From positions 434,001-498,000 of IMG/VR virus record IMGVR_UViG_3300046665_000548: a DNA stretch of 64,000 bases; one strand, written 5' to 3'. Below are positions 2,343 to 62,921 of this stretch, piece after piece (the first letter of the stretch is position 1; each line of letters opens with the position of its first letter). Under the pieces are notes generated by a model. It did no database searches and was not told where the DNA came from. It was given only the letters and a program-made list of their open reading frames with translations. The translations under genes were made by a program, and so were the position numbers.

Positions 2343-2701
2343 TGTCTCTCGCCGGTCAGTATAAGATTCTGTCGTTTCTTTGGAACAACTCCGATGGGCA
2401 CGACAAGGTATGGGGGTACTTTATACTCTCCAGCGATCCCAGCACGTATTACAACTTTTGGGGACGGCGCGGGAAGAAACTGACCTGGAAGGAATACAAG
2501 GACGACGGCGGAATCATGGGGGCGCGAGCAGCCCTCAAGCTCGATAACCTGCGCATTACCAAGTCCAGAGGGAAGGGCTATCGAGAGGTCGCGGTGGACC
2601 AAATAGAGGCGATCACGCCCGGTTTCACGGACGAGTTCGAAAAGAACTTTACGCTGGCCCGGCTTTTCGACAACTTCCACAATAAGGTTCAGGAGGAATA
2701 A
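2342..2701 (+). CDS. WGR-domain-like protein
   Basis: YYNFWGRRGKK...KSRGKGYREV resembles the WGR...KGY signature. Confidence 0.6.
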   Translation: MSLAGQYKILSFLWNNSDGHDKVWGYFILSSDPSTYYNFWGRRGKKLTWKEYKDDGGIMGARAALKLDNLRITKSRGKGYREVAVDQIEAITPGFTDEFEKNFTLARLFDNFHNKVQEE

Positions 2702-3147
2702 TGCCTCGGCGCTACGATTATGACGCGGATGACATCGCGGCTGTCGAATATGACGGCAAGATACTAACCGACCGCAAGGTTGGTCGTCTGGAAGATAGGA
2801 ACGCGTTCTTCGGTCCGCCGAAATGTATGGGTTGGTTCTATGGCCAGTATCGGGCGTGTATCTACGACACGCCGTTCATGGACGAGGTTTTCGACTGGTG
2901 CGACGAGAATGCGACCGCGCCATGGTACTGGTTCGAACACTCCTGCAATCACGGCCACTCGGTCGAGACGAATGTGTGGTTCAGCAGCGAAGACGACGTG
3001 GGACGGTTCAGGGAACGCTGGGGCGATAAGGGATCGCCACGAGGCAAGAGCGACACGTTCGAGTTCAACAAGACCGCGATACGTCTCAATGAGAATTCAA
3101 TCGAAGCACGCAAGCGCTATGCGGCAAAGATGGAGAAATCGGCATGA
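2701..3147 (+). CDS. Hypothetical protein, member of the dispersed small paralogue family
   Basis: VFDWCDEN...VWFSSEDDVGRFRERWG. Confidence 0.65.
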   Translation: MPRRYDYDADDIAAVEYDGKILTDRKVGRLEDRNAFFGPPKCMGWFYGQYRACIYDTPFMDEVFDWCDENATAPWYWFEHSCNHGHSVETNVWFSSEDDVGRFRERWGDKGSPRGKSDTFEFNKTAIRLNENSIEARKRYAAKMEKSA

Positions 3148-3437
3148 CGTTTCTTAAGCGAATATTGCCGTTGCTGCCGGATGCGGTAACTGGAACTGCT
3201 CCGCGACCCACCCGCGCGCCGTACACCGACAATGAGCGGTCAGTTATTCGGGCCTATGCGAATGGCGATCTGTCCTACCGCGAGCAAGCCCTTATTATTT
3301 TTCGCGGCCATCTTCGCGCCGGGGTGTTTCGCAAGGACCCTTATTTCGAGTTCATGAGCGAGATCGACTCGCCCGTTCCGTGCTGGATCGTGAAAGGCCG
3401 TGCGCGCTCGGCTATTACGGGAAAGCCGTTTCCGTGA
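3144..3437 (+). CDS. Hypothetical protein
   Basis: ATGA-coupled ORF in the + strand operon. Confidence 0.6.
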   Translation: MTFLKRILPLLPDAVTGTAPRPTRAPYTDNERSVIRAYANGDLSYREQALIIFRGHLRAGVFRKDPYFEFMSEIDSPVPCWIVKGRARSAITGKPFP

Positions 3438-4051
3438 GCAAGCCAAAGCCAATGAAAATTGGGGAGGTCCGCGTATACGATGTCGCCGGAACGGCGGTCG
3501 AACTCACACGGGTAGACCCGACAACACGTGAGTACAGCTTCCACACGTTCAAGGACCAAAAATCTCGATACGAGGTCCGGGTCGATGGTGTTCTACGAGC
3601 ACACATTCAGTGCCCGGCAGGGTTTGGTAATCCTTGGGAAATCGTCAGCCTGGGGCGGGACGGGATGCACGTCTACGACTTCGAACGTGACGATCCTCAA
3701 CGGGTTTATCCGGAAAAGAACTACCGTATGCGCGGCGCACCTGTTGAAGGACGGGATGAACTTGTTCTGCTCATCCCAGGTTTTATCGCAAACGGTAAGC
3801 TGCCGACGCAGGAAAAAATCATAGCTGATACGAAAGCAGCAGCGGAGCGCGCTAAGCAACGCGAAGAAGAGAGCCGTATTTCTACCGAACGTTCGAAAAT
3901 CGAATATGCTGAACGCCAGCGGCTCCAAGAAGAACATCGTCAGTTTACATTGGAAGGTCTTGAGTCTATACGAGACCGTTTCCAAGGCCAGTTGAGTAAT
4001 ACGGAAACCGAAGCTCTGTTAACCGCAATTGAAAAATGGAAACCAAAATGA
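3434..4051 (+). CDS. Hypothetical protein with C-terminal coiled coil
   Basis: GTGA overlap with the previous stop; charged helical C-terminus. Confidence 0.65.
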   Translation: MSKPKPMKIGEVRVYDVAGTAVELTRVDPTTREYSFHTFKDQKSRYEVRVDGVLRAHIQCPAGFGNPWEIVSLGRDGMHVYDFERDDPQRVYPEKNYRMRGAPVEGRDELVLLIPGFIANGKLPTQEKIIADTKAAAERAKQREEESRISTERSKIEYAERQRLQEEHRQFTLEGLESIRDRFQGQLSNTETEALLTAIEKWKPK

Positions 4052-4326
4052 TCAACTTTACTCAGAACTTCTGGCACGATCACGGGGTGTTCTTTCTCAT
4101 CTTCATGATGATCTTTCCCCGACTGACGCTGCTGTTCGCAACGTCCGTGACGTTCGGCGTCTTTGCGTGGATCGGATGGCTAATTGGTCCGCGCGTCGTA
4201 GCGGCCTACTACGCGTCTGTGTTTTACTGGGACTCGAACCCATTCCTAGTTGCTATCGCGTGGGTCTTGTCGATCTCTACGCTTCTCGGGTGGGCGGGCG
4301 TGATCAATCGGAAGCTTGGTAGATGA
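4048..4326 (+). CDS. Small membrane protein
   Basis: Several hydrophobic segments; ATGA overlap. Confidence 0.65.
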   Translation: MINFTQNFWHDHGVFFLIFMMIFPRLTLLFATSVTFGVFAWIGWLIGPRVVAAYYASVFYWDSNPFLVAIAWVLSISTLLGWAGVINRKLGR

Positions 4327-4706
4327 GGACCAAATTCATCGAAGCAACCAACTGCCCTATGAACTGGGGTAAGTTCATGATCGGTGAGTTCACCGCCGAA
4401 GAATGGGCTCTACGATCTCAAGTCGATGATCGGTCAATCATTCGTGGCCGAGGCTGGAGTTCGAAGCACAAACTCGTGCTGGATTTGCAAACCGGGGAGG
4501 GAGCGGTGTTCTCTCCCGGTGGTTACGCAAAGGCCGACTTGGACAAGCACAAGATTTGGGTTTGTCCGCTGTTCGAACCATTCCTAGAGTGGTTTTATAA
4601 GCAGGACCTGTCTGATATCGATGCGCTTCCGACACATGTCGATCTTCCTGACGCTCCGTTCTCGATGTCTGGATATCGTCGTGCCGGGGTCAGGGAAGAT
4701 ACATGA
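4323..4706 (+). CDS. Hypothetical protein
   Basis: Coupled ORF, 127 aa. Confidence 0.65.
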   Translation: MRTKFIEATNCPMNWGKFMIGEFTAEEWALRSQVDDRSIIRGRGWSSKHKLVLDLQTGEGAVFSPGGYAKADLDKHKIWVCPLFEPFLEWFYKQDLSDIDALPTHVDLPDAPFSMSGYRRAGVREDT

Positions 4707-4975
4707 AACCGAGCGCCGCTACGCAAGCCGCCTATGACGCAGTGAGCGATGATATCAAGAGCGATATCGTTGATGCGGCTAATTGGGCGCGGAATACGCT
4801 GACCAATCTCGAAGGCTCTGGTCACCACATTGTAGTGACCGGAGAAAAATCGACTGGGCTGGTGGTATGCTCGTTCGCCAAGGCATCCTGGGCAGGAGAC
4901 CATAGCGGGCCTGCGATGGAAGAAGGTGCCGAGGCAATCGTCATGGCGGTTTGTTCTTACATGAACGGGCAATAG
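4703..4975 (+). CDS. Hypothetical protein
   Basis: Coupled ORF, 90 aa. Confidence 0.6.
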   Translation: MKPSAATQAAYDAVSDDIKSDIVDAANWARNTLTNLEGSGHHIVVTGEKSTGLVVCSFAKASWAGDHSGPAMEEGAEAIVMAVCSYMNGQ

Positions 4976-4985
4976 GAGGCGAGCT

Positions 4986-5610: not shown

Positions 5611-5622
5611 CTGAGAAATCCC

Positions 5623-6555: not shown

Positions 6556-6585
6556 TGAATGACCATGTGAAAGAATAGGGTCTGT

Positions 6586-8918: not shown

Positions 8919-9443
8919 TTAAGTGGTCGGCATTACGCCGTCGAACAGGTATACGACTGGTTGGAAATCGACGCTTTCTTCTTCGATGATTTCCGAAATA
9001 ATTTTCCAAGAACCACCAGCTAGTCCTGCGCCGATCAGGGGGAAAGCTACGGTATCGATACGACCAAAGTAGTTGATAGCTCCCTGAACCTGCGATGCTT
9101 TGGCGGTCGCGTTGATCTGCTGCATGACCTTACGAATCGCATCGTAGTCCGCATATCTCACGCCATCTGGTTCGTACGATTTACGATAGGTCTCCTGGGT
9201 GATCGCGTTGATGATGACGTGCTTTTCGCCCATCACCCAAACTGCCGTGCCGAGTGGAATAAACTTCTCACCTCGGGATATCGCTCCTGCGTGAGCATTC
9301 ATATAGAATTCATACGCGGCCGGTTCTTGTTCGCGAACCTGCTTTGCGATCCCCTTGCCCATCTTGCCTTGGGCGTTGCAGCCATGGCAGATGACTCTCT
9401 CGGGTGCGGCGAGCAGATCGCCGGTCTTATAAATGATCTTCAT
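8919..9443 (-). CDS. Macrodomain protein (ADP-ribose binding/hydrolase, T4 Tk.4-like)
   Basis: GDLL...HGCNAQGKMGKGIA...AFPLIGAGLAGGSW. Confidence 0.88.
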   Translation of the reverse strand: MKIIYKTGDLLAAPERVICHGCNAQGKMGKGIAKQVREQEPAAYEFYMNAHAGAISRGEKFIPLGTAVWVMGEKHVIINAITQETYRKSYEPDGVRYADYDAIRKVMQQINATAKASQVQGAINYFGRIDTVAFPLIGAGLAGGSWKIISEIIEEESVDFQPVVYLFDGVMPTT

Positions 9444-9672
9444 GCAAAATCTTCCTATCGCAAATTAGCTTAAACGCGACAGCGCCTTCATTGGTCTGAA
9501 ATGAGACCTTGGTCGTCTGCCAATCGATTATCCGGATGCTTGGATTCTCCGATCCAAGCTCGCCAAGTCGCCAGACTATCTCAAGCAGATTGTTAATGGC
9601 AACATCTAGTGTCCTGTACAGCGAGCTACCATGTTCGTTGGAGTCAACGGTCTCGATGATGAATTCAATCAT
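9427..9672 (-). CDS. Small paralogue-family protein
   Basis: VSFQTNEGAVAFKLICD. Confidence 0.6.
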   Translation of the reverse strand: MIEFIIETVDSNEHGSSLYRTLDVAINNLLEIVWRLGELGSENPSIRIIDWQTTKVSFQTNEGAVAFKLICDRKILHEDHL

Positions 9673-12351: not shown

Positions 12352-12681
12352 TTAAGAATCAAAGACACCGCACAGCTTGGCATGCAAGGTATCTCGGTTG
12401 AAATGTTCGAAATCGCCTTCGAAGCGGTCAAAGCTGACCTCTCGCGTCGCTCGTCTGGACAGCAATGTCAGCTTCCACCGGCCGCATTCGTAGCGAATGC
12501 GGTCGTGAGTTCGACTGTTCTCCCATGACATAAGGAGGGGATCAGTTATCCAGAAGACACGAATAGTGCGCTGATCGGAAATAGCAACGCGCTTGGCTTC
12601 GGTTGGTCCATAGTTGCCGCCGCCCGGTATAACCGAGCGCCAAGACAGGCAAAGGTCCTGATCAGGTTTCATCAGAATCAA
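12352..12681 (-). CDS. Hypothetical protein (related C-terminus to 14199..14642)
   Basis: FEGDFEHFNRDTLHAKL. Confidence 0.55.
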   Translation of the reverse strand: MILMKPDQDLCLSWRSVIPGGGNYGPTEAKRVAISDQRTIRVFWITDPLLMSWENSRTHDRIRYECGRWKLTLLSRRATREVSFDRFEGDFEHFNRDTLHAKLCGVFDS

Positions 12682-14174: not shown

Positions 14175-14202
14175 ATCATGCCACGGTTTAGACATTCGTC
14201 AA
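14175..14202 (-). promoter_or_regulatory. Early promoter TTGACG-N16-CATGAT
   Basis: Heads the 11.7-14.1 kb minus-strand operon. Confidence 0.65.
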
Positions 14203-14642
14203 GCGATTTTTCGGTGGTTCTTCCGGTCTCGAAACAACTTCACAATACAAAGATCGTTTTCGAACTGTCCGAAATCTCCACGAAATCTGATATCTATTAT
14301 GCGCCATCCTTTGGGTGAATTGATCGCGCTATAGTCCACTCGCCAAGACTGTTCTTCATCACTCTTCATCCCAAGAGCGGTATGTTTTACCATGTATTGG
14401 CTCACCCGAAATGAGCGGGTGCCAATCGTTCTCCGGCTTACTAAGTTACTGCGATACTTTTCATAATAGGTGCTCGGTCGGCGCACGAACCAATACAGAA
14501 CATGCACGTGATATTGCTCAAGCTGATGCTCGGTCTTCTTGTGTTGTGATTCGATGAAGCATGTGTTGGGCCACTTTTCTTTACCTAGTGCGAAGCGGCG
14601 CATCATTTTTTGGCTATCCGAGAAATTGGTCGATTTACCCAT
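14199..14642 (-). CDS. Hypothetical protein, possible paralogue-family member
   Basis: IRFRGDFGQFENDLCIVKLFRD. Confidence 0.55.
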   Translation of the reverse strand: MGKSTNFSDSQKMMRRFALGKEKWPNTCFIESQHKKTEHQLEQYHVHVLYWFVRRPSTYYEKYRSNLVSRRTIGTRSFRVSQYMVKHTALGMKSDEEQSWRVDYSAINSPKGWRIIDIRFRGDFGQFENDLCIVKLFRDRKNHRKIA

Positions 14643-15837: not shown

Positions 15838-15927
15838 TCGTTTTCACTATTCCCAATCTACCAGAAGTTCTATAAGACGGCGAGATATACTCGGCGCATG
15901 AACATTACCCCAAAGGAGCCTTTGGCT

Positions 15928-20205: not shown

Positions 20206-20663
20206 CAGAGTATCCCCGAAAAGCTGTTGCAAAGCGTGTCTACGTCGATCTTCGGTGCGCCCTCCACCACGTATCGTCCCCAAATGGTTTCGGGAATAAT
20301 GCGAGCCTGAGTGTCTTGGCGTCCGAGTATGTGGGCCTTCACGTATCGATGATGGCCGTCCAGGGTCAGGTGCGATCCATCGTACCAAGTAGCGATCATC
20401 ATCGGGTACTTGTCGAGATCGTCGGCCGTGATTCTTGCGAGACGATGTTGCTCGATGCCGCGTTCATCTCGAAACTGCGCAGCAATCTCCGACAGGACCG
20501 GTATCAGAAAAATCTCCAACGCGAGCATGTCTGGATCGCGCATTAGTCGCTCGACCGCAATAATCGTGATCTCGCCCGAATCGGGGTCCTGGTACGTGTA
20601 TGCGACCTCTCGCTTGCGTACTAACTCTTCAAACTGAGGGCGCATCCTCTTTCCTTCATTCAT
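20205..20663 (-). CDS. ParB/Srx N-terminal-like domain protein
   Basis: LTLDGHHRYVKA motif. Confidence 0.6.
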   Translation of the reverse strand: MNEGKRMRPQFEELVRKREVAYTYQDPDSGEITIIAVERLMRDPDMLALEIFLIPVLSEIAAQFRDERGIEQHRLARITADDLDKYPMMIATWYDGSHLTLDGHHRYVKAHILGRQDTQARIIPETIWGRYVVEGAPKIDVDTLCNSFSGIL

Positions 20664-20890
20664 CCGAACCTCAGTTTAAAAGCGAGCGCCGTATCGGCGT
20701 CTGAGAACCAGAAGTCCCATGCCCCATTACCAGCAGTCCACTTGCCGCGTGCGTTCACATCGTGGTCCAACCAATCCCAAATCCCCTTATCGTATTCACC
20801 TGAGGTACTGGATAGATCGAGTCTGACGCAATGCCACGCGCTCCAGTCGATCTTCCGGATGTCCCAGGTTTCTACGATCTCTCGCGCCAC
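20660..20890 (-). CDS. Small paralogue-family protein
   Basis: IWDWLDHD...FWFSDADTALAFKLRFG. Confidence 0.7.
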   Translation of the reverse strand: MAREIVETWDIRKIDWSAWHCVRLDLSSTSGEYDKGIWDWLDHDVNARGKWTAGNGAWDFWFSDADTALAFKLRFG

Positions 20891-22309: not shown

Positions 22310-22314
22310 GTCGC

Positions 22315-22342
22315 AGATTACCATGTAACAAACTTTTGGCAA
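22315..22342 (-). promoter_or_regulatory. Early promoter TTGCCA-N16-TAATCT (probably leaderless tyrS mRNA)
   Basis: ATG lies 5 nt after the -10 hexamer. Confidence 0.65.
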
Positions 22343-22343
22343 G

Positions 22344-22751
22344 TCACTCGTGGAACATTTTGAACAACGTAGCTAGATGATCGCTCACAAAACCGAAACC
22401 GATCTTCTTGCTATATTGAAAGTCCCAAACCGCGAAATACTCGTTATGAAGGACGTATTCAAAAGACGAGCACGACTGGATAGGATATGATTTGCTTCGA
22501 TCAAGCTGACACTCAATCCAGTAAAGCAAATCCAAGACGGGCTGTTCGTCTCTCTCAAACGGTGGCAGCGGAAGAACGACTAGAAATTTCGGCGGTTCGA
22601 TGCCTCTCCATGCGTTGTTGACCATCATATCCATGATGACTTCAAAACGAATTTCTTTGCGTTCGTCGCGACTCATCCGATGGCCGAGAGAATTCCAACA
22701 CCCAGGAACAGTGCGGGATTGGCGATCATTGCGATTGCCAGACCAACGCAA
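22344..22751 (-). CDS. Small paralogue-family protein
   Basis: GFGFVSDHLATLFKMFHE; true start probably further downstream. Confidence 0.6.
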   Translation of the reverse strand: MRWSGNRNDRQSRTVPGCWNSLGHRMSRDERKEIRFEVIMDMMVNNAWRGIEPPKFLVVLPLPPFERDEQPVLDLLYWIECQLDRSKSYPIQSCSSFEYVLHNEYFAVWDFQYSKKIGFGFVSDHLATLFKMFHE

Positions 22752-23384: not shown

Positions 23385-23687
23385 TTAACTCCATCTGATC
23401 TTAAATTCTAAAGCTTCAGTCTCGTCCTTGACGCCGAACGCAAATAACTCCCATGTCTGTATTCGGCTGATCTTGTAGACGGGCGAAATATCAATTCCTT
23501 TTTTCTCGCACCAGTCTTCAAATTCTTCGAATTCGGGAAGGGTCGTGTTCCAATACATGTTCACGACCCAATAGTCTTTACCGCGAACATGAATTGGTGA
23601 GATATCCGTAACTTCGTGTGTTTTTCTCGACATCAGAAAACCCATAATGAAATGGGTCACTGTAAGATGCAGAGGTGCCAGCTTCAA
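23385..23687 (-). CDS. Small paralogue-family protein
   Basis: FEDWCEKKG...FGVKDETEALEFKIRWS. Confidence 0.7.
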   Translation of the reverse strand: MKLAPLHLTVTHFIMGFLMSRKTHEVTDISPIHVRGKDYWVVNMYWNTTLPEFEEFEDWCEKKGIDISPVYKISRIQTWELFAFGVKDETEALEFKIRWS

Positions 23688-41422: not shown

Positions 41423-41443
41423 TAATTAACTACCCCTGGAGAT

Positions 41444-47140: not shown

Positions 47141-47506
47141 ATGTTGGAATCGGGCGTACTCGATTACCCAGTCACGTGGCGACACATGAAGTCAGGGTTC
47201 CTTCTAATGGGAAAGCCAAAGGGCTTTTTTCCAGATATCACCGATCTTGTCCAAAGGGGCGTTGAGCCACCGATCTCCGACGAAGAGAAAATGTTCAACG
47301 TTGTGATTTTTCCAGAACCAAATTTGATTTCCGAACTGCGTGAATGGTTGTCAGAAAATACAGACATGCAGGTCGGAATGTTCGCCCGATTTTCATGGGT
47401 CACACAGAAATATCGTATCGACCGAGAGTATCAAGGTGTACGTTTTGTGTTCGAAGATATGAACGTCGCGGTTCTTTTTAAGCTGTTTTGGGCACAAGGT
47501 TCTTAA
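47141..47506 (+). CDS. Small paralogue-family protein
   Basis: LREWLSEN...FVFEDMNVAVLFKLFWA. Confidence 0.65.
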   Translation: MLESGVLDYPVTWRHMKSGFLLMGKPKGFFPDITDLVQRGVEPPISDEEKMFNVVIFPEPNLISELREWLSENTDMQVGMFARFSWVTQKYRIDREYQGVRFVFEDMNVAVLFKLFWAQGS

Positions 47507-48724: not shown

Positions 48725-49858
48725 ATGCAATTGATTCATATCCCAGAGTTGGTACATCTGCGCAATACCTTCCAGAAGTCGGGCTTCGATATCCGACTGG
48801 TTGGTGGTTGTGTGCGCGATATGCTGATGGACATTCAGCCCAAGGATATTGATCTGTGCACGGATGCCTCGCCTGACGAGCAGATCGCTCTGTATAAGGC
48901 TGCCGGTGTTCGGTTTGCTGAGACCGGTCTCCAGCATGGCACGATCACTGCAATCCTGCCGGAGGGCGTCTACGAGATCACGTCCCTGCGTACCGAGACG
49001 GAGCACGATGGCCGCCACGCGACCGTCAACTATACCCGTGACTGGAACGAGGACCTGGGCCGTCGCGATCTGACCATCAACGCGATGGCTATGACCTTCG
49101 AGGGGCAACTGCTGGACCCGTTCGGCGGGCAAGAGGATTTGAAGGCCCGTAGGCTGCGTTTCGTCAATGATCCGGATCAACGTATGCAGGAAGATTACCT
49201 GCGTATTCTGCGCTGGCTGCGGTTTCAGGGTCGAATTGCCCCCGGTCAGCAACTGGACCAGGATACCTGCGCCGCCGCAATGCGCAATGCCAAGGGTCTG
49301 GAGCGTATCTCGCGTGAGCGTGTCTGGTCCGAGGTCTCCCGGATGCTGTCCACGGACGGCGGTCCGGAGATGCTGGATGCTATGTGGAATTTGGGTCTGG
49401 CCGATCCATGCGGTCTGCCACGCGGGTATAGCGCCGAGGTTCGGCGCGTGCATCAGTATACGCGCGATCCCGTTGCACTGATGGCTACCTTCATCGGTGA
49501 TTCGGAAACGATGGCCGCGCTGGCTCGCGCGTGGAAGTGGAGCACCGATGAATCGAAGCTGGCGCAGTTTCTGACCAAGAATCGTTTCCGCAAGGACTTG
49601 GACTTCAAGCGGATGGTCGCGCTGAACGGCGTCACCAAGGATGCGATTTTTGCCCTGTCTATCCTGGAGGATCGCAGGGTGGAGGGTGAGGCCGTGATGG
49701 GCTGGGACGTACCCGTGTTCCCGGTGACCGGCAACGATCTGATCGCGGCTGGCATTCAGCAGGGTAAACAGATTGGTGAGACCAAGACTCGTCTGATGAA
49801 CCTGTGGGCCGATTCGGAGTTCAATATGTCCAAGGACGACCTGATGGGGGCAATCTAA
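48725..49858 (+). CDS. cca: tRNA nucleotidyltransferase (CCA-adding enzyme, class II)
   Basis: [42 protein letters not shown]. Confidence 0.92.
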
Positions 49859-49993
49859 CCATGATGCGTTTCCTGCGACGCTTGCAGCGCTATTTCAAGA
49901 AGGAAGATCGTTCGTCTATAGCGTACATGACGCCAATCGTTGGCGTCATGCTCGTTATCAACGGCCGAAGCATCACCCCAGCAGCGACCAGAT

Positions 49994-50257
49994 ATGAACG
50001 AACCATTTCTCATCGAATTGGAACGTGATCCGTCTCTCTATGGGGAGATTAACGCGCAATTTCGAATATTCGAAATGCGTTGGGTCGAGGTCACTCGTAT
50101 AAAAATGATGGAGGAATGGTGCGCCTCCATGTTTGGTGTCGATCCACGCATGGAGAACGATAAGCTTCCCATCGAGCGCTGGAGTAGAATGGGACCACGC
50201 TGGTATTTTAGGGACGAGACCGACGCCCTTGTCTTCAAAATGATGTGGACGACTTAA
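49994..50257 (+). CDS. Small paralogue-family protein
   Basis: MEEWCASMFG...WYFRDETDALVFKMMW. Confidence 0.7.
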   Translation: MNEPFLIELERDPSLYGEINAQFRIFEMRWVEVTRIKMMEEWCASMFGVDPRMENDKLPIERWSRMGPRWYFRDETDALVFKMMWTT

Positions 50258-52333: not shown

Positions 52334-52639
52334 TTAAAGGTAGTTGCGGAGATTCGGCTCGTCGCCGTACCGAATAAGATGAAACTCTACCTCAGCAATG
52401 GCCTGTTCCACACTCAACTTAAACCATTCTCCGTGAGAACGACGATATTTGAGTGTCTTGTGGATCATCTGTTCCATCAGCTTGGCTTGTTTAGGAGAAA
52501 ATTCCTGCTGATGCCAAAGAGTGAGAGGCTTGGGATATCCCGTTTGGAGTTCTTTGAGGCGACGATTGGGATCGTTGCTGAATCCAATTTTAACTGGACC
52601 CTGCTCGTCGGCGGCAATGACATAAATGAAAATTTCCAT
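52334..52639 (-). CDS. GIY-YIG (T5orf172/MUG113-like) domain protein
   Basis: FIYVI...VKIGFSNDPNRRLKELQTG...EWF. Confidence 0.85.
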   Translation of the reverse strand: MEIFIYVIAADEQGPVKIGFSNDPNRRLKELQTGYPKPLTLWHQQEFSPKQAKLMEQMIHKTLKYRRSHGEWFKLSVEQAIAEVEFHLIRYGDEPNLRNYL

Positions 52640-56003: not shown

Positions 56004-56223
56004 ATATTTCGTGGTGCGGCCGGATCAAGTTAAGGCGTACGCCCCTATCCGTGATATGCACCATGAGCGCGACGGCTGGAGAATCATGACCGAGGTCAAA
56101 ACCCGGAAGGGTACTCGGTATGGCAGGGTGCTAGAACAAGAGGCAAACGGCAATATACGCCACGCTCGTTTTACGAGCGAGGCTGAGGCCGCTGCGGCAA
56201 TCCCTGAGGTATCTCGCCGTTAG
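55996..56223 (+). CDS. Hypothetical protein
   Basis: Coupled to the HAD gene. Confidence 0.5.
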   Translation: MARYFVVRPDQVKAYAPIRDMHHERDGWRIMTEVKTRKGTRYGRVLEQEANGNIRHARFTSEAEAAAAIPEVSRR

Positions 56224-56942
56224 GTCATCAGCTTGGTCACGAGCGCGTCCAGATCGGCTGCGCGCTCTGACGCACGACCGTGTAGCACATGGTCGAAGCT
56301 TTCATCACGGATAGATTCTGCGCTCTCCAGATTGCTGAGGACCGTAGTTGCGTAAGAGGACTCTGCGATGTCGCCAATGTCGATAACCTGACCACTGGTT
56401 CCAATCACGACCAGCACGTCTTCCTTCGTGAGCGATTCGATAATCTTCCACAGCTTGGGGTATTCTGGCGCGATCTCGTTGAAGAACACGACATTTGGCT
56501 TCACGCCCTTGAGGGAATTGCAGGCCGGGCAACGACCCTCTTTTGCGGACCACTCGGCATAGCCAATGTCCCAGGTAGGACAGCCCATGGCGGTGCACTG
56601 CATCTTCTTGAGATCGCCATGCGCGTGGATGACGTTCGCGCACCCGGCGCGCTCGAAGAGATCGTCAATATTCTGAGTGATTACCTTGGCGTCGTAGCGC
56701 TTTTGCCAGTCCGCAACCACGAAATGCGCCTTATTGGGCTCAACATTCGCCAGTTGGGTGCGCCGCTCATTGTAGAAACGGTGAACAAGTTCCCGATTCT
56801 GCTTCCACGTCAATAGGTTAGCAACAGCATCAACGCTGTGGTTCTCCCAAAGACCATCCTTGTCGCGAAAGGTTTGGATACCCGAATCAGCACTGATTCC
56901 GGCCCCGGTGAAGACGACTAGATTGCGGTGAGTTCTATCCAT
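56220..56942 (-). CDS. Sirtuin (Sir2/CobB-like NAD-dependent deacylase)
   Basis: TGAGISADSGIQTFR, TQNIDDL, HAHG, KPNVVFF, IGTSG, CxxxC/CxxC Zn sites. Confidence 0.93.
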   Translation of the reverse strand: MDRTHRNLVVFTGAGISADSGIQTFRDKDGLWENHSVDAVANLLTWKQNRELVHRFYNERRTQLANVEPNKAHFVVADWQKRYDAKVITQNIDDLFERAGCANVIHAHGDLKKMQCTAMGCPTWDIGYAEWSAKEGRCPACNSLKGVKPNVVFFNEIAPEYPKLWKIIESLTKEDVLVVIGTSGQVIDIGDIAESSYATTVLSNLESAESIRDESFDHVLHGRASERAADLDALVTKLMT

Positions 56943-57247
56943 GGACCCAGTTTACCACGAGAACAGCCGAAACGCAACTTGAATAGCACGGCCGAGTGGT
57001 CGTCTTCAAAGCGGAACAGTGCTCCGGTACAGACCCCGGTCTCCGCATGAATAACGTTCTTAAAGGCCCATTTTCCTATCGAGTACGCAAATAGCCAGTG
57101 GACTATTCGTCCCTCATCATTTGATGGGAGAAAGTTCGCGGCTGCCACCTCATATCTAAGGGTGTCAAAATCAGCAACTCGCACACGCAATAATTGTAAT
57201 TCAGTTATCCAGTCCAACCATGACTCCACATACACGCCATTGTCCAA
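56918..57247 (-). CDS. Small paralogue-family protein
   Basis: IVHWLFAYSIGKW...FRFEDDHSAVLFKLRFG. Confidence 0.7.
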   Translation of the reverse strand: MDNGVYVESWLDWITELQLLRVRVADFDTLRYEVAAANFLPSNDEGRIVHWLFAYSIGKWAFKNVIHAETGVCTGALFRFEDDHSAVLFKLRFGCSRGKLGPWIELTAI

Positions 57248-58110
57248 AGTAAAGTCGCCGCCGTAAGTGCAGTGGTGCCAGTTGGATCATAAGGTGGGCT
57301 CACTTCGACCAAATCCATACCGATGAATTGATCACCCGTTAACCGATCAAGAAAATTGAGCACAAAATGCGGATTAAGCCCGGCAATTTCTGGCGTCCCC
57401 GTTCCTGGTGCATACGCGGGGTCCAGAGCATCGATATCGAAGGATAGATAGATGTTCTGTTTCTCGGAAAGCTTTCTCGCAAGACTATCGCCGCCTCTAC
57501 TCAAAGCATCACGCGCAGATACCACCGTACCGCCTCGGTTGCGTAACCACTCTCGCGTGACAGGATCGACTGGCGATCTAACGCCGATCTGAATAACGTT
57601 TTCGGCTTTCACGAAGCCACGTTCGACTACATTTCGAACCCAGGTGCCGTGCCCAATAGGGTCGCCAAAATGGTCAGCCCACGTATCGCAGTGTGCATCA
57701 AAATGTAGAAGGGTGATGTCTTTGTATTTTCGCGAATATGCTTCGAGCAAAGCCAGTGAGATCGTGTGATCGCCGCCCATAAACATTAGTTTGGCTGTAT
57801 CCAACAGGAACATTGGATGATTACATACGCTCTCTACAATCGTGTTCAGGCTCTTCTGAACATCAATGTTAGATACAGAAATGTCTCCGAGGTCCGTTAC
57901 ATACGGAACGGGATCAACTCCAAGAATCGGATGAGCCCCGTCCGTGAGCATCATGCTGGCTTCCCGAATTGCTTTCGGCCCGAAGCGTGTCCCAGGCCGA
58001 AAGCTATTTGATCCATCGTATGGAATACCGAACACGCCGATCCTACGAGAGAGATCGCCAATAGGGCTCTTCAAGAACGTAGCAAAACCTTCGTATGGCT
58101 TTTCGAGCAT
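57205..58110 (-). CDS. speB: Agmatinase (ureohydrolase family)
   Basis: FRPGTRFGP, GGDHTIS, HFDAHCD, SFDIDALDPAYAPGTGTPE. Confidence 0.88.
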   Translation of the reverse strand: MLEKPYEGFATFLKSPIGDLSRRIGVFGIPYDGSNSFRPGTRFGPKAIREASMMLTDGAHPILGVDPVPYVTDLGDISVSNIDVQKSLNTIVESVCNHPMFLLDTAKLMFMGGDHTISLALLEAYSRKYKDITLLHFDAHCDTWADHFGDPIGHGTWVRNVVERGFVKAENVIQIGVRSPVDPVTREWLRNRGGTVVSARDALSRGGDSLARKLSEKQNIYLSFDIDALDPAYAPGTGTPEIAGLNPHFVLNFLDRLTGDQFIGMDLVEVSPPYDPTGTTALTAATLLWTMACMWSHGWTG

Positions 58111-58122: not shown

Positions 58123-59346
58123 TTAGTCGTCTAGTTGAACGTTGCGATCTCGGTAATTGTCCCACGATAGCCCATTTACGGCCCATCGCGCGGATTCCAC
58201 TTTAGTGCGAGTGTGCATATTCTTGGACAAGAATTTTCGGACTACTTCTACCGGTTCGATCTTATCCCAGATCGCAAACAGTAATGCACTATGCTCTTTC
58301 GGTTGAGTCAAAACTGCTTCGGTAGCGAAACGCTTTTTATCACCAGCAAGCTCGATTCGCTTCAACTCTACGAAAGCTTGTAGTCTTCCGGCTGTCAAAG
58401 CGATTTCAGTCTCGAAGTCGTTTACGTATCGTTTAACGCGATCTTGATCTGCATCATCCATGAACGCAAGAGCATCATCCATCCGTTCTTCTAGGATTAG
58501 CGCCCACACATCCTTTTCCTGTTGCAGCAAGTCTTTGGTGCTGTGGATTTGACAATACCATGCGCCTTTGACCTTCAGCATGTGGCCATTATCGAAGCGG
58601 ATCACATAACCCTCCGAGCCCTCAAGATCGCGAGCTTCCGCCATGAACGTTTCGATACTTTGGATCGAACCGGGTAGCGCTCGGACAACTGGAATTGAAA
58701 ACTTTCGTCCCAGTTTGATAAGCTCGCCATGCGAAAGATACGATCCGTCACCGTTATTGCGGACTGCGGTTAGGATCAAAGCATCTTCAGGATAATCGAT
58801 CACGATCTTCTGCTTGCGCGAACACCACTCGAAAATTGGTGTACGCTCTTGCGTCAGTTCAGACATCGCGTAATTTACGTAGCCCAAATTTTTCGCGATA
58901 AAATCTTCGACAGGCAGCGCTACGTCAGTCAACCCCATTTTCGTCCCCCAACGTAGACAACTATCCGAGATGAAAGGCGTGATCATCGACCCGTCTAGTT
59001 TCTCCAAGACGTGATGTGGCGCACTCCAATCTACCAGATTTGCCTGCGTGAAAGGTTTTTCATTGACGTTGAAAAACTTATGATACCGACGCGCAAGTAT
59101 ACGGCCTGTTTTTTTACATACGATCAAGCCTCGGCATTCTCGCAAAATAGAATACTGTCTGTTTAGCGACTGATCATCCGTATCTGGCTGTGGGAATGAA
59201 CCATCAAACGCGACGATGTAATTGAAGACGACATGATCTCCACGGTCGGCTTCAATAAACGCAGTAGTTCCGGTCCTTGCGTTATGCTCTGTGATTACAG
59301 ACCTAACCTCTTCAAGCGACAGTTCGCTTGGAAATTCGTAAAACAT
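58123..59346 (-). CDS. T4 RNA ligase 1-like (Rnl1)
   Basis: RECRGLI, YHKFFN, EKLDGS (motif I), FEWCS, EGYV, KVK. Confidence 0.9.
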   Translation of the reverse strand: MFYEFPSELSLEEVRSVITEHNARTGTTAFIEADRGDHVVFNYIVAFDGSFPQPDTDDQSLNRQYSILRECRGLIVCKKTGRILARRYHKFFNVNEKPFTQANLVDWSAPHHVLEKLDGSMITPFISDSCLRWGTKMGLTDVALPVEDFIAKNLGYVNYAMSELTQERTPIFEWCSRKQKIVIDYPEDALILTAVRNNGDGSYLSHGELIKLGRKFSIPVVRALPGSIQSIETFMAEARDLEGSEGYVIRFDNGHMLKVKGAWYCQIHSTKDLLQQEKDVWALILEERMDDALAFMDDADQDRVKRYVNDFETEIALTAGRLQAFVELKRIELAGDKKRFATEAVLTQPKEHSALLFAIWDKIEPVEVVRKFLSKNMHTRTKVESARWAVNGLSWDNYRDRNVQLDD

Positions 59347-59476: not shown

Positions 59477-60256
59477 TTGAGAGGCAAACCTATGGTCGAG
59501 ACAACGGCGAGTGAAAAAATCGGCTCCGATGAGCGGAAAGAGACGGCAATCGCAGCCGCGACAGCCACGGTAACGGCAGCAGCAGCGGCAATCGCCGCAG
59601 CCCCAGGAAAGCCCGAAACGGATTCGGAGATCGATCCTCCGGCTTGTAAATTGGCGCTGAACGGCGTCATCGAGGCCGGTCAGCGATTGGACACTGCCAA
59701 GGAATCCATGCAGAAGATCGCGAAGGAACTTTCCGATCTTCGCGTTAACCTCGACTCCAGTCCCCCGGACAAATTCATCGACTCGAATATCGTCGGCGTA
59801 CGAGTTCCAGTCACGTCCAAGGTGGCACTACTCGCGAAGCGCGCCGAACTCCAGAGAGCGTCGGATGATGTCCGGGAATGCGTGGAGAACCTGATGGACC
59901 ATCAGGCTCGCCTCGTGGCCACTGCGCATCTCCCCGAGCCCGAGGAAGAGCACCCAGTGGCATCGTCACCACCACGGTCGATCTTCCAGCCCACCGAAAC
60001 AGAAGAACCGGACGCGCTACAGGCGCTGTCAGACGTGATCGCAATTGAGTTGGCGGAGACCGTCGCAGGCGTCGAAAGGGACCGCCAGCAGCCACCGGAA
60101 CGCTATGTGCCGCGCCAACCACTGCGACCTCAGCCTCAGCCCCCGGCATTTCTGAGGCAGGTTGTCGAGCGTAACGAAAGCCCGGACGATCCCCAAGAGA
60201 CCGGCATCCTGCGCAACATCTTCAAGACGCGAAGGGCAGAAGCCGTAGACGGCTAG
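59477..60256 (+). CDS. Hypothetical protein, partly low-complexity/coiled coil
   Basis: GAGG RBS; 259 aa. Confidence 0.6.
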   Translation: MRGKPMVETTASEKIGSDERKETAIAAATATVTAAAAAIAAAPGKPETDSEIDPPACKLALNGVIEAGQRLDTAKESMQKIAKELSDLRVNLDSSPPDKFIDSNIVGVRVPVTSKVALLAKRAELQRASDDVRECVENLMDHQARLVATAHLPEPEEEHPVASSPPRSIFQPTETEEPDALQALSDVIAIELAETVAGVERDRQQPPERYVPRQPLRPQPQPPAFLRQVVERNESPDDPQETGILRNIFKTRRAEAVDG

Positions 60257-60567
60257 AACATCCACGAAACTAGTGGCTTATCATTGAGGATCGCTTTCCA
60301 GCGATCCTCATAATATCCGTACTCGTTGCTGATTTTGAACAGAACGGCGTCTCGTTCGTCTTCAAACGAAACAGTCATGTAGTAGTCGGCAAGCTCGATA
60401 CGCCAGAGACCATGACAGTTCTTTTGGCACCAAAACTCAATAAACCTACAGAGCAGTTCGGCCCTCACCTCATCAATGCCCGCGCGGATGAGGTTCAGCG
60501 AGGTCACGAAGTGCTGGTCGTTCACCGCGCCAGCGTCGAAGCGGGCAAAGGCTGTGGAGTGTGCCAT
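60253..60567 (-). CDS. Small paralogue-family protein
   Basis: IEFWCQKNCHGLW...VSFEDERDAVLFKIS. Confidence 0.7.
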   Translation of the reverse strand: MAHSTAFARFDAGAVNDQHFVTSLNLIRAGIDEVRAELLCRFIEFWCQKNCHGLWRIELADYYMTVSFEDERDAVLFKISNEYGYYEDRWKAILNDKPLVSWMF

Positions 60568-60573
60568 CCATCC

Positions 60574-60581
60574 TATTTATG
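60574..60581 (-). promoter_or_regulatory. Late promoter CATAAATA (leaderless candidate)
   Basis: 6 nt before ATG 60567. Confidence 0.55.
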
Positions 60582-60599
60582 GATAGTTTGACCGCTTAA

Positions 60600-61411: not shown

Positions 61412-61554
61412 GTTACTGCATTCAGACCGAGACCTAAGAACGTCAACGCGCCAGGGCTCGTCAGCGAATGAGTCGTGAAATAGATTTTCGAACCGTTGGC
61501 GAGAAGGAAGAACAGGTTTGTACTAAAGAGGATAAAACGAAGAACTGAGAGCAT
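61345..61554 (-). CDS. Small membrane protein
   Basis: Hydrophobic 69-aa ORF. Confidence 0.45.
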   Translation of the reverse strand: MLSVLRFILFSTNLFFLLANGSKIYFTTHSLTSPGALTFLGLGLNAVTCLYFLPSVVKMFWQLRSNKAE

Positions 61555-61557
61555 TAC

Positions 61558-61749
61558 TCACCTCAATGACTTAATGTACGCGTCAATAGCCGCGCGAGCT
61601 TGGCGCATACTGTGACAATTTTTTATCGTGCAAGGGCGAGGTTCCTTGTCGAGACAATAAGAAGGCCCGCTGTCTGCTTCACATATAGCTCGGCCAACGA
61701 CGCGCACCCTTTTATGATGCGCGTCTTTGCGGGTTTTCTTCTCGGTCAC
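61558..61749 (-). CDS. Small Cys-containing hypothetical protein
   Basis: ATGA-coupled to clpP. Confidence 0.5.
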
Positions 61750-62339
61750 GCGATATCGGAACGGCTCGCAACAACCTTATCGATGAGACCAAATTCCATG
61801 GCCTCCTGTGCCGACAAGAACGTGTCGCGATCCATTTTCGACTCAATGACCTCAAGCGGCTGTCCTGTGTTATCGGCAAGCATCTGATTGAGCATTTCCT
61901 TGAGGCGCTGAATCTCTTTGTAGGAGATTTCAATATCCGAAGCCATGCCGCGAGCGCCACCAGAAGGCTGATGGATCATGATGCGGGAGTTCGGAAGGGA
62001 GATACGCTTGCCCTTGGCACCAGCAGAAAGTATCATCGCTCCCATCGACGCGGCCTGACCGATACATACCGTGCACACGTCCGGCTTGATAAAGTTCATC
62101 GTGTCGATGATGCCGAGACCTGCCGTAACCACGCCGCCCGGCGAGTTAACGTACATGTAGATGTCCTTATCGGCGTCAACACTTTCGAGGTACAGAAGCT
62201 GCGCCTCGATGAGGCTAGCCATACCGTCTTCGACCTGATCAGCACAGAAAATAATGCGGTCGCGCAGCAGTCGGGAGTAGATGTCAAACGAACGTTCGTT
62301 GCGACCGTCGTTTTCGAGAACCATGGGCACGAGAGCCAT
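61746..62339 (-). CDS. clpP: ATP-dependent Clp protease proteolytic subunit
   Basis: [43 protein letters not shown]. Confidence 0.96.
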
Positions 62340-62340
62340 A

Positions 62341-62562
62341 TCAGTAAACCTTTTTACGCAATGCGTCTTGGATTGAAAATAATGAAGCCAAGATCAAAAG
62401 AACCACGATCCCAGCAATGTAAAATGCTCCTACCAGAAGAACCGGAACAATTGGTATCCAAACCGGAGTAAGGACCCAGAACCAAGACCAGTTAATAAAA
62501 CCGGCAAGCTTCAATGAAATCGATAAAACTGAAAGAAGTAAGAAGAACCTTCCGTAAGTCAT
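62341..62562 (-). CDS. Small membrane protein
   Basis: [21 protein letters not shown], a common phage TM motif. Confidence 0.65.
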
Positions 62563-62600
62563 GAACGAATACTACAACCTCCTGGTTTCGGCAAACAATA

Positions 62601-62921
62601 TCAGAAATAATTCTCTCGACCGCTAAACGCTTCGTTCTCACCGTCCATCAATTTGAACATGAGACCATCGTTGATCTGCTCGAACAAAATGACGAACTGA
62701 ATGCTACCGCCAGTGTATTGGCTGTAAGAACCCCACCGACCGGTGATGTTTTTTTCAAGCCAAGCATCGAGAGTTTTGAGATTTGCTCTGCCGTCGTATT
62801 CGCGAGAAAACTGATGGCGGACCCAATCCAATGGGTACGCCCCGTCAAATTTCTTACGCGGCGTTAGGATGTCTCTCGGAGCAAGGGAGAGATCAGTAAA
62901 ACGAACAGTTTCTGGCAACAT
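62601..62921 (-). CDS. Small paralogue-family protein
   Basis: LDAWLEKNITGRW...ILFEQINDGLMFKLMDG. Confidence 0.7.
   Translation of the reverse strand: MLPETVRFTDLSLAPRDILTPRKKFDGAYPLDWVRHQFSREYDGRANLKTLDAWLEKNITGRWGSYSQYTGGSIQFVILFEQINDGLMFKLMDGENEAFSGRENYF

What the first reader, a model, noticed from the sequence alone, without database searches (positions are those of the whole stretch)
2701..62921. Dispersed family of about 15 small paralogues with a W..E...F..E.DA..FKL motif
Seen: many 75-150-aa ORFs share a mid-protein xxW(C/L)xE helix and a C-terminal F(x)(E/D)xxxAxxFK(L/I/M) motif. Examples: 20660 FSDADTALAFKLRFG; 23385 KDETEALEFKIRWS; 47141 FEDMNVAVLFKLFW; 49994 FRDETDALVFKMMW; 56918 FEDDHSAVLFKLRFG; 60253 FEDERDAVLFKIS; 62601 FEQINDGLMFKLM; 22344; 9427; 18955; 17422; 2701; weaker 12352, 14199, 31656. 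They lie on both strands, inside unrelated operons, and differ widely outside the motif. Inference: an expanded, diversifying family such as host-protein-binding anti-defence factors or adaptors on a shared small scaffold.
Basis: partly seen in the sequence, partly recalled or inferred. Interest (0 to 1): 0.68.

Follow-up and report, generated by a model that had tools for sequence, protein, structure and literature searches.

The report
Expanded small-protein family in a giant phage
The motif marks a real, uncatalogued small protein domain found in this work only in phages, present in about 63 diverged copies (about 7% of genes) in this 608-kb phage genome and in tens of copies in several other giant phages; its function is unknown.

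Summary
The window lies in a complete 607,744-bp phage genome.

**Window count.** Of the 15 ORFs named, 8 are firm members (2701, 20660, 23385, 47141, 49994, 56918, 60253, 62601). ORF 22344 is probable and 9427 is marginal. ORFs 17422, 18955, 12352, 14199 and 31656 are not supported.

**Genome count.** Profiles built from the window copies recover 63-64 copies across the genome, with no reversed or shuffled decoy at E<=1e-3.

**Fold.** The domain is 55-70 aa and usually C-terminal. It is predicted at pLDDT 82-84 as beta-alpha-beta-beta-alpha. The conserved residues look like fold core. No Pfam, PHROG, NCBIfam or PDB relative was found.

**Distribution.** An exhaustive search finds 5,039 clusters. 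The nearest ESM Atlas clusters are 93-100% viral. A motif scan was true in 33 of 33 viral contigs and 0 of 9 prokaryote contigs. Other giant phages carry 6-66 copies; the cultured Sinorhizobium phage Phosso has 49.

**Evolution.** Paralogues are old (median 24% identity). Orthologues are under purifying selection (dN/dS about 0.1). The three PA5oct copies are not flagged as virion proteins.

**Best guess, inferred only.** These are soluble binding modules with paralogue-specific targets. An anti-defence role is untested.

The parts
2701..3147 (+). Family member, 148 aa; domain at about 2851-3033, followed by a 40-aa tail
   Evidence: E 1.6e-13 with the iterated profile and 5.9e-10 with the A2 profile. 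It was not found by the seed profile and was recovered on iteration.
20660..20890 (-). Family member, 76 aa; domain at about 20663-20818, at the C-terminus. Lies about 270 bp downstream of the class-I (W/Y) aminoacyl-tRNA synthetase gene, with one small ORF between
   Evidence: E 6e-9 and 7e-10; gene map
22344..22751 (-). Probable family member (up to 135 aa; the start is uncertain). Domain at about 22347-22547, with a long insert between the first helix and the hairpin
   Evidence: E 2.6e-5 (iterated profile), 0.025 (A2 profile) and 4.9e-6 in the six-frame search. Above the best decoy in both script profiles, but it was not picked by my crude gene caller.
23385..23687 (-). Family member, 100 aa; domain at about 23388-23564
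   Evidence: E 3e-8 and 2e-11
47141..47506 (+). Family member, 121 aa; domain at about 47303-47500
   Evidence: E 1e-12 and 1e-11. The orthologue in contig L044 is 81% identical, dN/dS 0.11.
49994..50257 (+). Family member, 87 aa from the ATG at 49994 (the longest ORF starts at 49940). Domain at about 50069-50254. Follows the CCA-adding/poly(A) polymerase gene
   Evidence: E 1.6e-13 and 5.5e-13. The 87-aa product is on record as P0001. The domain model has pLDDT 84. The orthologue in L044 is 74% identical, dN/dS 0.11.
56918..57247 (-). Family member, 109 aa; domain at about 56957-57133. Sits between a SIR2-like gene and an arginase-family gene
   Evidence: E 3e-11 and 7e-10. The orthologue in L044 is 63% identical, dN/dS 0.08. 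Neighbour families come from the orthologues' Pfam hits.
60253..60567 (-). Family member, 104 aa; domain at about 60319-60480, followed by a 25-aa tail
   Evidence: E 3e-11 and 1e-11
62601..62921 (-). Family member, 106 aa; domain at about 62631-62810
   Evidence: E 9e-11 and 9e-12
9427..9672 (-). Possible, very divergent member, 81 aa; not counted
   Evidence: 31.7 bits only against the seed profile, which it helped to build. E 1.3 (iterated profile) and 0.14 (A2 profile), at the level of the best decoy.

Best explanation
**Shown.**
- The ORFs belong to one real protein-domain family.
- The domain is 55-70 aa and normally sits at the extreme C-terminus.
- It is predicted to fold as strand-helix-strand-strand-helix: a three-stranded sheet with two helices on one side.
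- The family was found only in tailed phages. It has no entry in Pfam, PHROGs or NCBIfam and no solved relative.
- This 608-kb phage carries 63-64 copies. They are dispersed on both strands and mostly packed tightly into co-directional gene strings.
- Several other giant phages carry 6-66 copies.
- The conserved positions are aromatic or aliphatic, plus a helix-capping D-A and one always-basic residue. The hairpin, the loops and the N-terminal extension vary freely.

**Inferred.**
- The conserved residues build a stable mini-fold.
- Each paralogue uses its variable sheet face, loops and N-terminal extension to bind its own macromolecular target, host or phage.
- The repertoire therefore acts as a set of soluble, probably non-virion modulators or inhibitors kept for separate jobs.
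- Whether the targets are defence systems is not known.
For: **Family reality.** See, with negative-control genomes.

**The ORFs are genes.**
- 97% of members have positive codon-usage scores, against 39% of other small ORFs.
- Orthologues are retained in synteny with dN/dS 0.08-0.11.

**Fold.** Two models (pLDDT 84 and 82, pTM 0.67 and 0.71) share the helix-hairpin-helix core. The full-length model adds an N-terminal strand.

**Conserved residues look like core, not a catalytic set**.

**No fused known domain.**
- None in 9 longer genome copies.
- None in 10 longer outside proteins.
- N-terminal regions are mutually unrelated.

**Soluble proteins.** No membrane-like segment, and isoelectric points are mixed: 36 acidic and 15 basic domains.

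**Phage-only distribution.**
- 5,039 clusters at E<=1e-3 in the exhaustive search.
- The nearest Atlas clusters are 93-100% viral.
- The DAxxFKLRWG DNA pattern hit a true domain in 33 of 33 viral contigs and 0 of 9 prokaryote contigs.

**Recurrent expansion.** Copy counts are 62, 66, 38, 19 and 6 in five complete 360-480-kb phage genomes and 49 in Phosso. Tandem arrays occur in L041, L043 and L128.

**Probably not virion proteins.** The PA5oct copies (the gp246/247 locus, gp274, gp275) carry no ESI-MS/MS flag, while flagged virion proteins sit beside them. Gene-product and locus-tag numbers agree.

**Stand-alone domains exist.** Proteins of 54-66 aa consist of the domain alone, so the domain must act by itself.
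Against: - No partner, ligand or phenotype is known for any member.
- The binding role rests on the pattern of conservation and on analogy.
- The models are predictions. I could not inspect coordinates, so 'core' versus 'surface' is read from residue type and periodicity only.
- The always-basic residue in the last helix (K 89%, R 11%) could be functional rather than structural.
- Purifying selection and stable synteny are not what fast arms-race anti-defence genes usually show.
- In PA5oct the copies lie outside the strongly early-transcribed block, gp34-gp105, so an immediate-early takeover role is not indicated there.
- The expression of these genes in this phage is unknown; no sequencing run was listed.
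Confidence: 0.42

Rival explanations
1. Docking module. The conserved C-terminal domain binds one shared hub, such as a protease, a polymerase, a ribosome or a phage compartment. The variable N-terminal part is the cargo or specificity element, as in F-box or capsid-targeting designs.
For: The domain is within 3 residues of the C-terminus in 48 of 63 copies, and N-terminal regions are unrelated and run from 3 to 223 aa. One fully conserved basic residue and a conserved terminal W-G could be a recognition element. In PA5oct two copies lie two and three genes downstream of a ClpP gene.
Against: Many family proteins are the bare domain, 54-66 aa, with nothing to deliver. Tandem two-domain proteins exist. 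The conserved residues are mostly hydrophobic, as expected of a core. The ClpP adjacency is a single case.
Confidence: 0.2
2. Nucleic-acid-binding regulators. The family is a reduced RRM-, KH- or ACT-like sandwich that binds RNA or DNA, and the many copies act as gene-specific regulators. A similar role was proposed for the zinc-ribbon expansion of phage G.
For: The best solved-structure alignments are ferredoxin-like modules, including KH, RRM, La-related and ACT domains at Z 4.1-5.1. The conserved K and R lie in the last helix. The genes sit inside many different operons.
Against: These Z values are below the tool's own noise mark of about 8, and Foldseek found nothing at E<1. No RNP-type motif is present. 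Only 15 of 64 domains are basic and the median net charge is -1. No Pfam nucleic-acid-binding family matched at E<=1.
Confidence: 0.17
3. Small-ligand sensors or regulatory subunits. The domain is ACT-like and pairs up to bind metabolites, tuning neighbouring enzymes such as the tRNA synthetase, the CCA enzyme, or the SIR2-like and arginase-family proteins.
For: The secondary-structure order matches the first five elements of an ACT domain, with a weak match to the TyrA ACT domain (Z 5.1 and 4.9, 16-18% identity). Two-domain tandem forms exist. Window copies abut enzyme genes.
Against: There is no fourth strand and no ACT Pfam match. The neighbours are unrelated to one another and mostly of unknown function. 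The homodimer prediction gave no verdict.
Confidence: 0.07
4. Packaged or structural proteins, such as internal head or ejection proteins, which form paralogous families in some jumbo phages.
For: Paralogous virion-protein families are known in phiKZ-like phages (my own knowledge). Some window copies lie within about 10 kb of tail-fibre genes.
Against: None of the three PA5oct copies is flagged as detected in the virion proteome. The copies are dispersed through the whole genome rather than sitting in structural modules.
Confidence: 0.05
5. There is no family. The motif is a chance or compositional resemblance among unrelated short ORFs.
For: Pairwise BLAST between window copies is weak, with a best E of 1e-4.
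Against: No decoy scores E<=1e-3 against 64 real ORFs, with two different profiles. Held-out copies are recovered. Two control giant phages give zero. Thousands of outside homologues exist. The predicted folds agree.
Confidence: 0.01

Closest known systems
Unannotated homologues: 'uncultured Caudovirales phage' proteins in BFVD (e.g. A0A6J7WE82), Sinorhizobium phage Phosso hypothetical proteins, Pseudomonas phage PA5oct gp274/gp275, Agrobacterium phage Atu_ph07 AUZ95037
   Same: Same domain by profile and by predicted shape: TM 0.6-0.7 with probability about 1 in BFVD, TM 0.70 in the Atlas. All are small hypothetical proteins, often in arrays.
   Different: None has a name or a described function, so they identify the family but not its role. 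Copy number ranges from 2-3 (Atu_ph07, PA5oct) to 49 (Phosso) and 62-66 (two uncultured genomes).
Lineage-specific expansion of a zinc ribbon in Bacillus phage G (about 35 copies; Iyer et al. 2021, PMC7824862)
   Same: Tens of copies of one very small domain within a single giant phage genome. Its function is unknown and is proposed to be binding or regulation.
   Different: The fold is different and this family has no metal ligands. Phage G itself has no copy of it. This family is expanded in several giant phage genomes, not one. Paralogues here are no closer to each other than to copies in other phages.
Ferredoxin-like two-layer sandwiches: ACT domain (TyrA, 5uyy/5v0s), PII-like SbtB, RRM, KH
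   Same: The order of secondary-structure elements is strand-helix-strand-strand-helix, with helices on one face of an antiparallel sheet.
   Different: The last strand is missing. The best Z is 5.3, below the noise mark. Foldseek gives E>1. There is no sequence match, and no ligand-binding or RNP motifs.
Small phage anti-defence proteins (anti-CRISPRs, Ocr, T4 Arn)
   Same: Small, soluble, phage-encoded proteins with no enzymatic motif that act by binding (my own knowledge).
   Different: There is no sequence or fold relation: T4 Arn Z 3.5, the Csy-AcrIF5 entry TM 0.47 at E 5.3. Known examples are usually single-copy and patchy, not 60 old paralogues under purifying selection.
Multigene adaptor families of large eukaryotic viruses (ankyrin, F-box/PRANC, BTB repeats)
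   Same: A repertoire of many diverged copies of one small scaffold in the largest genomes of a virus group. These are thought to give many binding specificities (my own knowledge).
   Different: The folds and the hosts are unrelated. This is an analogy of design only, not tested here.

Membership tests
The uncatalogued phage domain family defined here (W-helix ... F-x-F ... D-A-x-x-F-K-L-R-W-G) | Profile match above all reversed and shuffled decoys | tested here: met
Met by 8 window ORFs at E<=1e-8 and by 22344 weakly.
The uncatalogued phage domain family defined here (W-helix ... F-x-F ... D-A-x-x-F-K-L-R-W-G) | Shared predicted fold: helix, hairpin, helix, with an N-terminal strand in the full-length protein | tested here: met
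   Models of window 50069-50254 and of genome ORF 337733-337981 agree. Outside homologues match by shape. Only two members were modelled.
The uncatalogued phage domain family defined here (W-helix ... F-x-F ... D-A-x-x-F-K-L-R-W-G) | Domain at the extreme C-terminus | tested here: met
   In 48 of 63 genome copies, 3 residues or fewer follow the domain. Window copies 2701 and 60253 are exceptions, with 40- and 25-aa tails.
ACT domain (ferredoxin-like, small-ligand binding) | Four-stranded strand-helix-strand-strand-helix-strand fold with a Pfam ACT-clan match | tested here: not met
   Only three strands are predicted. No Pfam match at E<=1 for 58 members. The TyrA ACT domain scores Z 4.9-5.1, under the noise mark.
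RRM / KH RNA-binding domains | Family sequence motifs and a significant structural match | tested here: not met
   No Pfam hit. Z is 4.1-4.8 only. Charge is mixed to acidic.
Pfam DUF3110 (PF11360) | Score above the gathering threshold (20.2 bits) | tested here: not met
   One outside member scored 12.1 bits, E 0.24, over the strand-helix motif only.
Known anti-defence proteins (anti-CRISPR, Ocr, Arn) | Sequence or fold relation to a characterised inhibitor, or a demonstrated inhibition | tested here: not met
   No PDB sequence match. The fold rows for Arn and the AcrIF5 complex are at noise level. Inhibition itself is not testable with these tools.
Expanded small-domain families of giant phages (a kind, not a homologous family) | Tens of paralogues of one small domain in one phage genome, with tandem arrays | tested here: met
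   63-64 copies here. The largest BLAST-detectable family in the genome has 8 members. Three recent tandem pairs are present. Arrays of up to 13 domains in 6.7 kb occur elsewhere.

The most novel reading that the evidence does not exclude
The domain is a general-purpose binding scaffold evolved by phages. Giant phages would keep a library of 40-66 versions, each neutralising or redirecting a different host protein, defence systems included. On this reading about 7% of the genes of these genomes form one combinatorial host-manipulation toolkit built on a fold with no solved relative.
Probability: 0.22. Interest if true: 0.8.

Novelty: new member of a known kind. Interest (0 to 1): 0.6.

Why it matters
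**Scale.** Giant phages are full of small genes of unknown function. Here one profile accounts for about 7% of the genes of a 608-kb phage, and for tens of genes in at least five other 360-480-kb phages. It also matches about 5,000 protein clusters in public data. None of these has a name in Pfam, PHROGs or NCBIfam.

**Immediate use.** Defining the family improves annotation of such genomes at once.

**A route to experiments.** Two cultured phages carry the family: Phosso with 49 copies and PA5oct with 3. The question of what the repertoire does is therefore testable at the bench.

**If the copies prove to be target-specific binders.** They would be a new natural scaffold and a source of inhibitors of bacterial proteins.

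**If they all do the same thing.** The reason for keeping 60 old copies would itself need explaining.

Tried and rejected
- **Family libraries.** Pfam, PHROGs and NCBIfam scans of window, genome and outside members found nothing significant.
- **Fused domains.** Pfam on 9 longer genome copies and 10 longer outside proteins found none. P0008 (Ig-like repeats) and P0013 (a tandem repeat) look like false positives of the big search.
- **Solved structures.** Nothing by sequence. Nothing by Foldseek. The exhaustive aligner reached only Z 4.4 and 5.3.
- **Homodimer prediction.** No verdict, so it counts neither way.
- **The search for related loci.** The single protein found nothing. The 588-aa neighbour protein found nothing in viral contigs. 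That protein is also absent from five other family-rich genomes, so their kinship to this phage is unknown.
- **tblastn.** One member found nothing in cultured phages. A more consensus-like outside member found PA5oct-like phages, Phosso and Atu_ph07.
- **Shared upstream motif or mobile cassette.** No enriched k-mer. The genes are tightly packed in strings, with a median gap of -4.
- **Neighbourhood bias.** Neighbours are no shorter than average (p=0.08).
- **Lineage-specific burst.** Rejected; the nearest-neighbour test is at chance.
- **Literature.** No paper holds the motif in this sense. Phosso is in no held paper. The PA5oct paper gives no per-gene data for the copies, and no supplement is held.
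- **Sequencing runs.** None was listed.

Full report
**Setting.** The window is bases 434,001-498,000 of a single 607,744-bp viral record. It has 51.7% G+C, is linear, and CheckV rates it 100% complete. The gene content is that of a giant tailed phage:
- tail-fibre-like ORFs of 742-1,012 aa carrying Mtd_N and He_PIG domains;
- a nicotinamide phosphoribosyltransferase;
- a class-I (W/Y) aminoacyl-tRNA synthetase;
- a CCA-adding/poly(A) polymerase;
- a T4-type RNA ligase.

The RNA ligase's best cultured relative is Sinorhizobium phage Phosso at 40% identity, followed by phages of other alphaproteobacteria. A 220-kb metagenome contig (L044) is syntenic with window positions of about 41-58 kb, at 63-94% protein identity.

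- A profile of the C-terminal ~60 residues of nine window ORFs was searched against every ORF of 45 aa or more in the genome, plus reversed and shuffled copies of them all.
- It found about 50 further ORFs outside the window before the first decoy, at E=0.2.
- Five iterations converged on 64 ORFs at E<=1e-3, no decoy at that level, and about 80 above the best decoy.
- A second profile, built mostly from outside sequences (A2), gave 64 real and 0 decoys.
- The tool's own six-frame search gave 63.
- Bacillus phage G (498 kb) and Xanthomonas phage XacN1 (385 kb) gave zero.
Four-sequence profiles recovered 16 of 24 held-out window copies above the best decoy, plus 31-42 other genome ORFs.

**Which named ORFs are members?** Eight are firm: 2701, 20660, 23385, 47141, 49994, 56918, 60253 and 62601. 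ORF 22344 is probable and 9427 is at the decoy edge. ORFs 18955, 17422, 12352, 14199 and 31656 are not supported.

**Are they genes?**
- 97% of family ORFs have a positive codon-usage score, against 39% of other 60-150-aa ORFs.
- Three window copies have positional orthologues in L044 at 81%, 74% and 63% identity. Their dN/dS is 0.11, 0.11 and 0.08, within the range of 16 neighbouring genes (0.03-0.22). dS is near saturation, so the ratios are rough.
- In a crude gene call of about 877 genes the family makes up 7.3%.
- It is by far the largest family; the largest BLAST-detectable family has 8 members.

**Anatomy.** The most conserved profile positions are:
- W in the first helix (95%), followed by L or C;
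- an aromatic residue in the first hairpin strand;
- F-x-F in the second strand (second F 92%);
- then D (63%), A (83%), x, x, F (88%), K (89%, otherwise R), L/M, R (59%), W/F (95%) and G.

These are core-type residues plus a helix cap; one basic residue is never lost. The domain ends within three residues of the stop codon in 48 of 63 copies. The part before it runs from 3 to 223 residues. The 40 N-terminal parts of 35 aa or more show no similarity to one another at E<1e-3. No copy has a membrane-like segment. Domain isoelectric points are mixed, with 36 below 6, 15 above 8 and a median net charge of -1.

**Predicted fold.**
- AlphaFold2 on the domain of the 49994 gene, with a 48-row alignment, gave pLDDT 84 and pTM 0.67. 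The order is helix, two-strand hairpin, helix.
- A full-length 82-aa genome copy, with a 134-row alignment that includes outside homologues, gave pLDDT 82 and pTM 0.71. It adds an N-terminal strand, giving strand-helix-strand-strand-helix.

**Relatives and annotation.**
- No member, inside or outside this genome, matches Pfam, PHROGs or NCBIfam at a meaningful level. None matches a PDB sequence.
- Foldseek against the PDB gave nothing below E=1.
- The exhaustive aligner gave at best Z 5.3. Those rows are generic ferredoxin-like modules: V-ATPase subunit a N-terminal domain, TyrA ACT domain, KH, RRM and PII-like proteins. All are below the tool's stated noise mark of about 8.
- Predicted viral structures do match. 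About 20 'uncultured Caudovirales phage' proteins score TM 0.6-0.7. The nearest Atlas clusters are unnamed and 93-100% viral.
- The exhaustive profile search of 1.84 billion cluster representatives found 5,039 at E<=1e-3. Most are 55-200 aa and some carry two domains. At least two of the top hits, a tandem-repeat translation and an Ig-repeat surface protein, are probable false positives.

**Restriction to phages.** I scanned for the DNA back-translation of D-A-x-x-F-K-L-R-W-G.
- Nine stretches matched in 596 Gb of prokaryote genomes. None encodes the domain.
- Thirty-three stretches matched in the viral contigs. All 33 encode it (one only at E 0.0012), and many have several further copies beside them, up to 13 domains in 6.7 kb.

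**Recurrent expansion.** Copy counts at E<=1e-3:

| Genome | Size | Copies |
|---|---|---|
| This phage | 608 kb | 63-64 |
| Uncultured, complete, terminal repeats | 462 kb | 62 |
| Uncultured, complete, terminal repeats | 436 kb | 66 |
| Uncultured, complete, terminal repeats | 480 kb | 38 |
| Uncultured, complete, terminal repeats | 365 kb | 19 |
| Uncultured, complete, terminal repeats | 361 kb | 6 |
| Sinorhizobium phage Phosso (cultured) | 469 kb | 49 |
| Pseudomonas phage PA5oct (cultured) | 287 kb | 3 |
| Agrobacterium phage Atu_ph07 (cultured) | 490 kb | 2 |

Smaller contigs of 35 and 146 kb carry tandem arrays of 8-10 copies. Whether these genomes are kin of this phage is not established. 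A 588-aa marker from the window is absent from five of them.

**Evolution of the copies.**
- Median identity between paralogous domains is 24%.
- Only three adjacent pairs are recent duplicates, at 77%, 58% and 53%.
- Among 122 domains from five phage sources, a copy from this genome has its nearest relative in the same genome in 34 of 62 cases. Chance would give 52%.
- The repertoire is therefore old, or exchanged between phages, and has been topped up by occasional tandem duplication. It is not a recent burst.

**Genomic setting.** The copies lie on both strands (35 plus, 29 minus) in every part of the genome.
- In 54 of 63 the upstream gene is co-directional.
- The median gap is -4, and 40 of 54 gaps are 20 bp or less, against 58% for other genes.
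- They are thus embedded in gene strings rather than carrying their own regulatory cassette. No k-mer is enriched upstream.

In the window they adjoin unrelated genes: 20660 lies about 270 bp downstream of the tRNA synthetase gene and 22344 ends directly upstream of it; 49994 follows the CCA enzyme; 56918 sits between the SIR2-like and arginase-family genes.

**What it most likely does.**

Shown:
- a real, phage-restricted, soluble mini-domain;
- conserved positions of core type;
- variable hairpin, loops and N-terminus;
- no fused enzyme or known domain;
- proteins that are the bare domain;
- each tested paralogue conserved under purifying selection;
- in PA5oct, none of the three copies flagged as detected in the virion, although neighbouring virion proteins are flagged.

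Inferred: the domain is a stable scaffold, and each paralogue binds its own target through its variable surfaces. I give this about 0.4.

Rivals:
- a common docking module with variable cargo (0.2);
- RNA or DNA-binding regulators (0.17);
- ACT-like ligand sensors (0.07);
- virion proteins (0.05).

The anti-defence idea is neither supported nor excluded. Stable synteny and low dN/dS fit it poorly. In PA5oct the copies lie outside the block the authors call early, gp34-gp105.

**Comparison with the known.**
- The closest described phenomenon is the roughly 35-copy zinc-ribbon expansion of phage G (PMC7824862).
- The closest fold class is the ferredoxin-like sandwich, but the membership tests for ACT, RRM and KH were not met.
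- The family itself appears to be undescribed in the libraries and papers I could search.
- I file it as a new member of a known kind: expanded small-domain families of giant phages.

**Limits.**
- Only two members were modelled, and I could not inspect coordinates.
- Gene starts are longest-ORF guesses.
- The homodimer prediction gave no verdict.
- No sequencing run was listed, so nothing is known about expression in this phage.

Noticed in passing
window 15898-17367 (+), 56220-56942 (-), 57205-58110 (-): A nicotinamide phosphoribosyltransferase gene (NAPRTase and NAMPT_N domains) lies in the same window as a SIR2-like gene and an arginase-family gene. The last two are assigned from the Pfam hits of their 80-83% identical orthologues. 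Together they suggest that the phage handles NAD+ or acyl-lysine metabolism, perhaps to counter NAD+-depleting defences.
   Followed up: no
window 21158-22342 (-), 48725-49858 (+), 58123-59346 (-): Translation and RNA-repair genes: a class-I (W/Y) aminoacyl-tRNA synthetase, a CCA-adding/poly(A) polymerase and a T4-type RNA ligase 1. No tRNA gene lies in the window.
   Followed up: partly
window 35502-43672 (-): Three consecutive large ORFs of 1,012, 961 and 742 aa. The first has a major-tropism-determinant N-terminal domain and the third has He_PIG Ig-like domains. They are probably tail fibres. The 961- and 742-aa proteins are 83-84% identical to those of contig L044.
   Followed up: no
window 35005-35089: An 85-bp stretch matches unannotated DNA of Pseudomonas phages Epa5 and Epa43 at 83% identity. 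It is the only nucleotide match of a 9-kb query to any cultured phage and is unexplained.
   Followed up: no
window 12352-12681 (-) and 14199-14642 (-): These two rejected candidates resemble each other near the C-terminus (F-E/R-G-D-F-x-x-F, 50% identity over 18 aa, E 0.028). They may be a separate small paralogue pair. Their coding scores are low.
   Followed up: no
window 47826-48677 (+) and 52334-52639 (-): A PAS-domain protein and a small T5orf172/MUG113 (GIY-YIG-like) protein, both assigned from their orthologues in L044. A sensor domain in a phage and a possible homing-endonuclease relic.
   Followed up: no
window 25248-26660 (-): A 470-aa ORF with a C-terminal DUF6011 domain (E 3e-10). 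It has the highest codon-usage score per length in this part of the window.
   Followed up: no
G000:C1:578475-579131 (+), outside the window: One 218-aa protein carries two copies of the domain in tandem. Two-domain forms are also frequent among outside homologues. This hints that domains may pair, but the homodimer prediction gave no verdict.
   Followed up: partly
G000:C1, several loci outside the window (e.g. 402146-412217; 109804-110951): Other paralogous families are detectable by BLAST. They include an 8-member family of 384-481-aa proteins in a 10-kb array, an 8-member family of 122-265-aa proteins, and a tandem array of five 70-85-aa proteins.
   Followed up: no
L061 (PA5oct 180349-182187): In PA5oct two family copies (gp274, gp275) lie two and three genes downstream of the phage's ClpP protease gene. 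Atu_ph07 also encodes a Clp ATPase. This may be coincidence.
   Followed up: no
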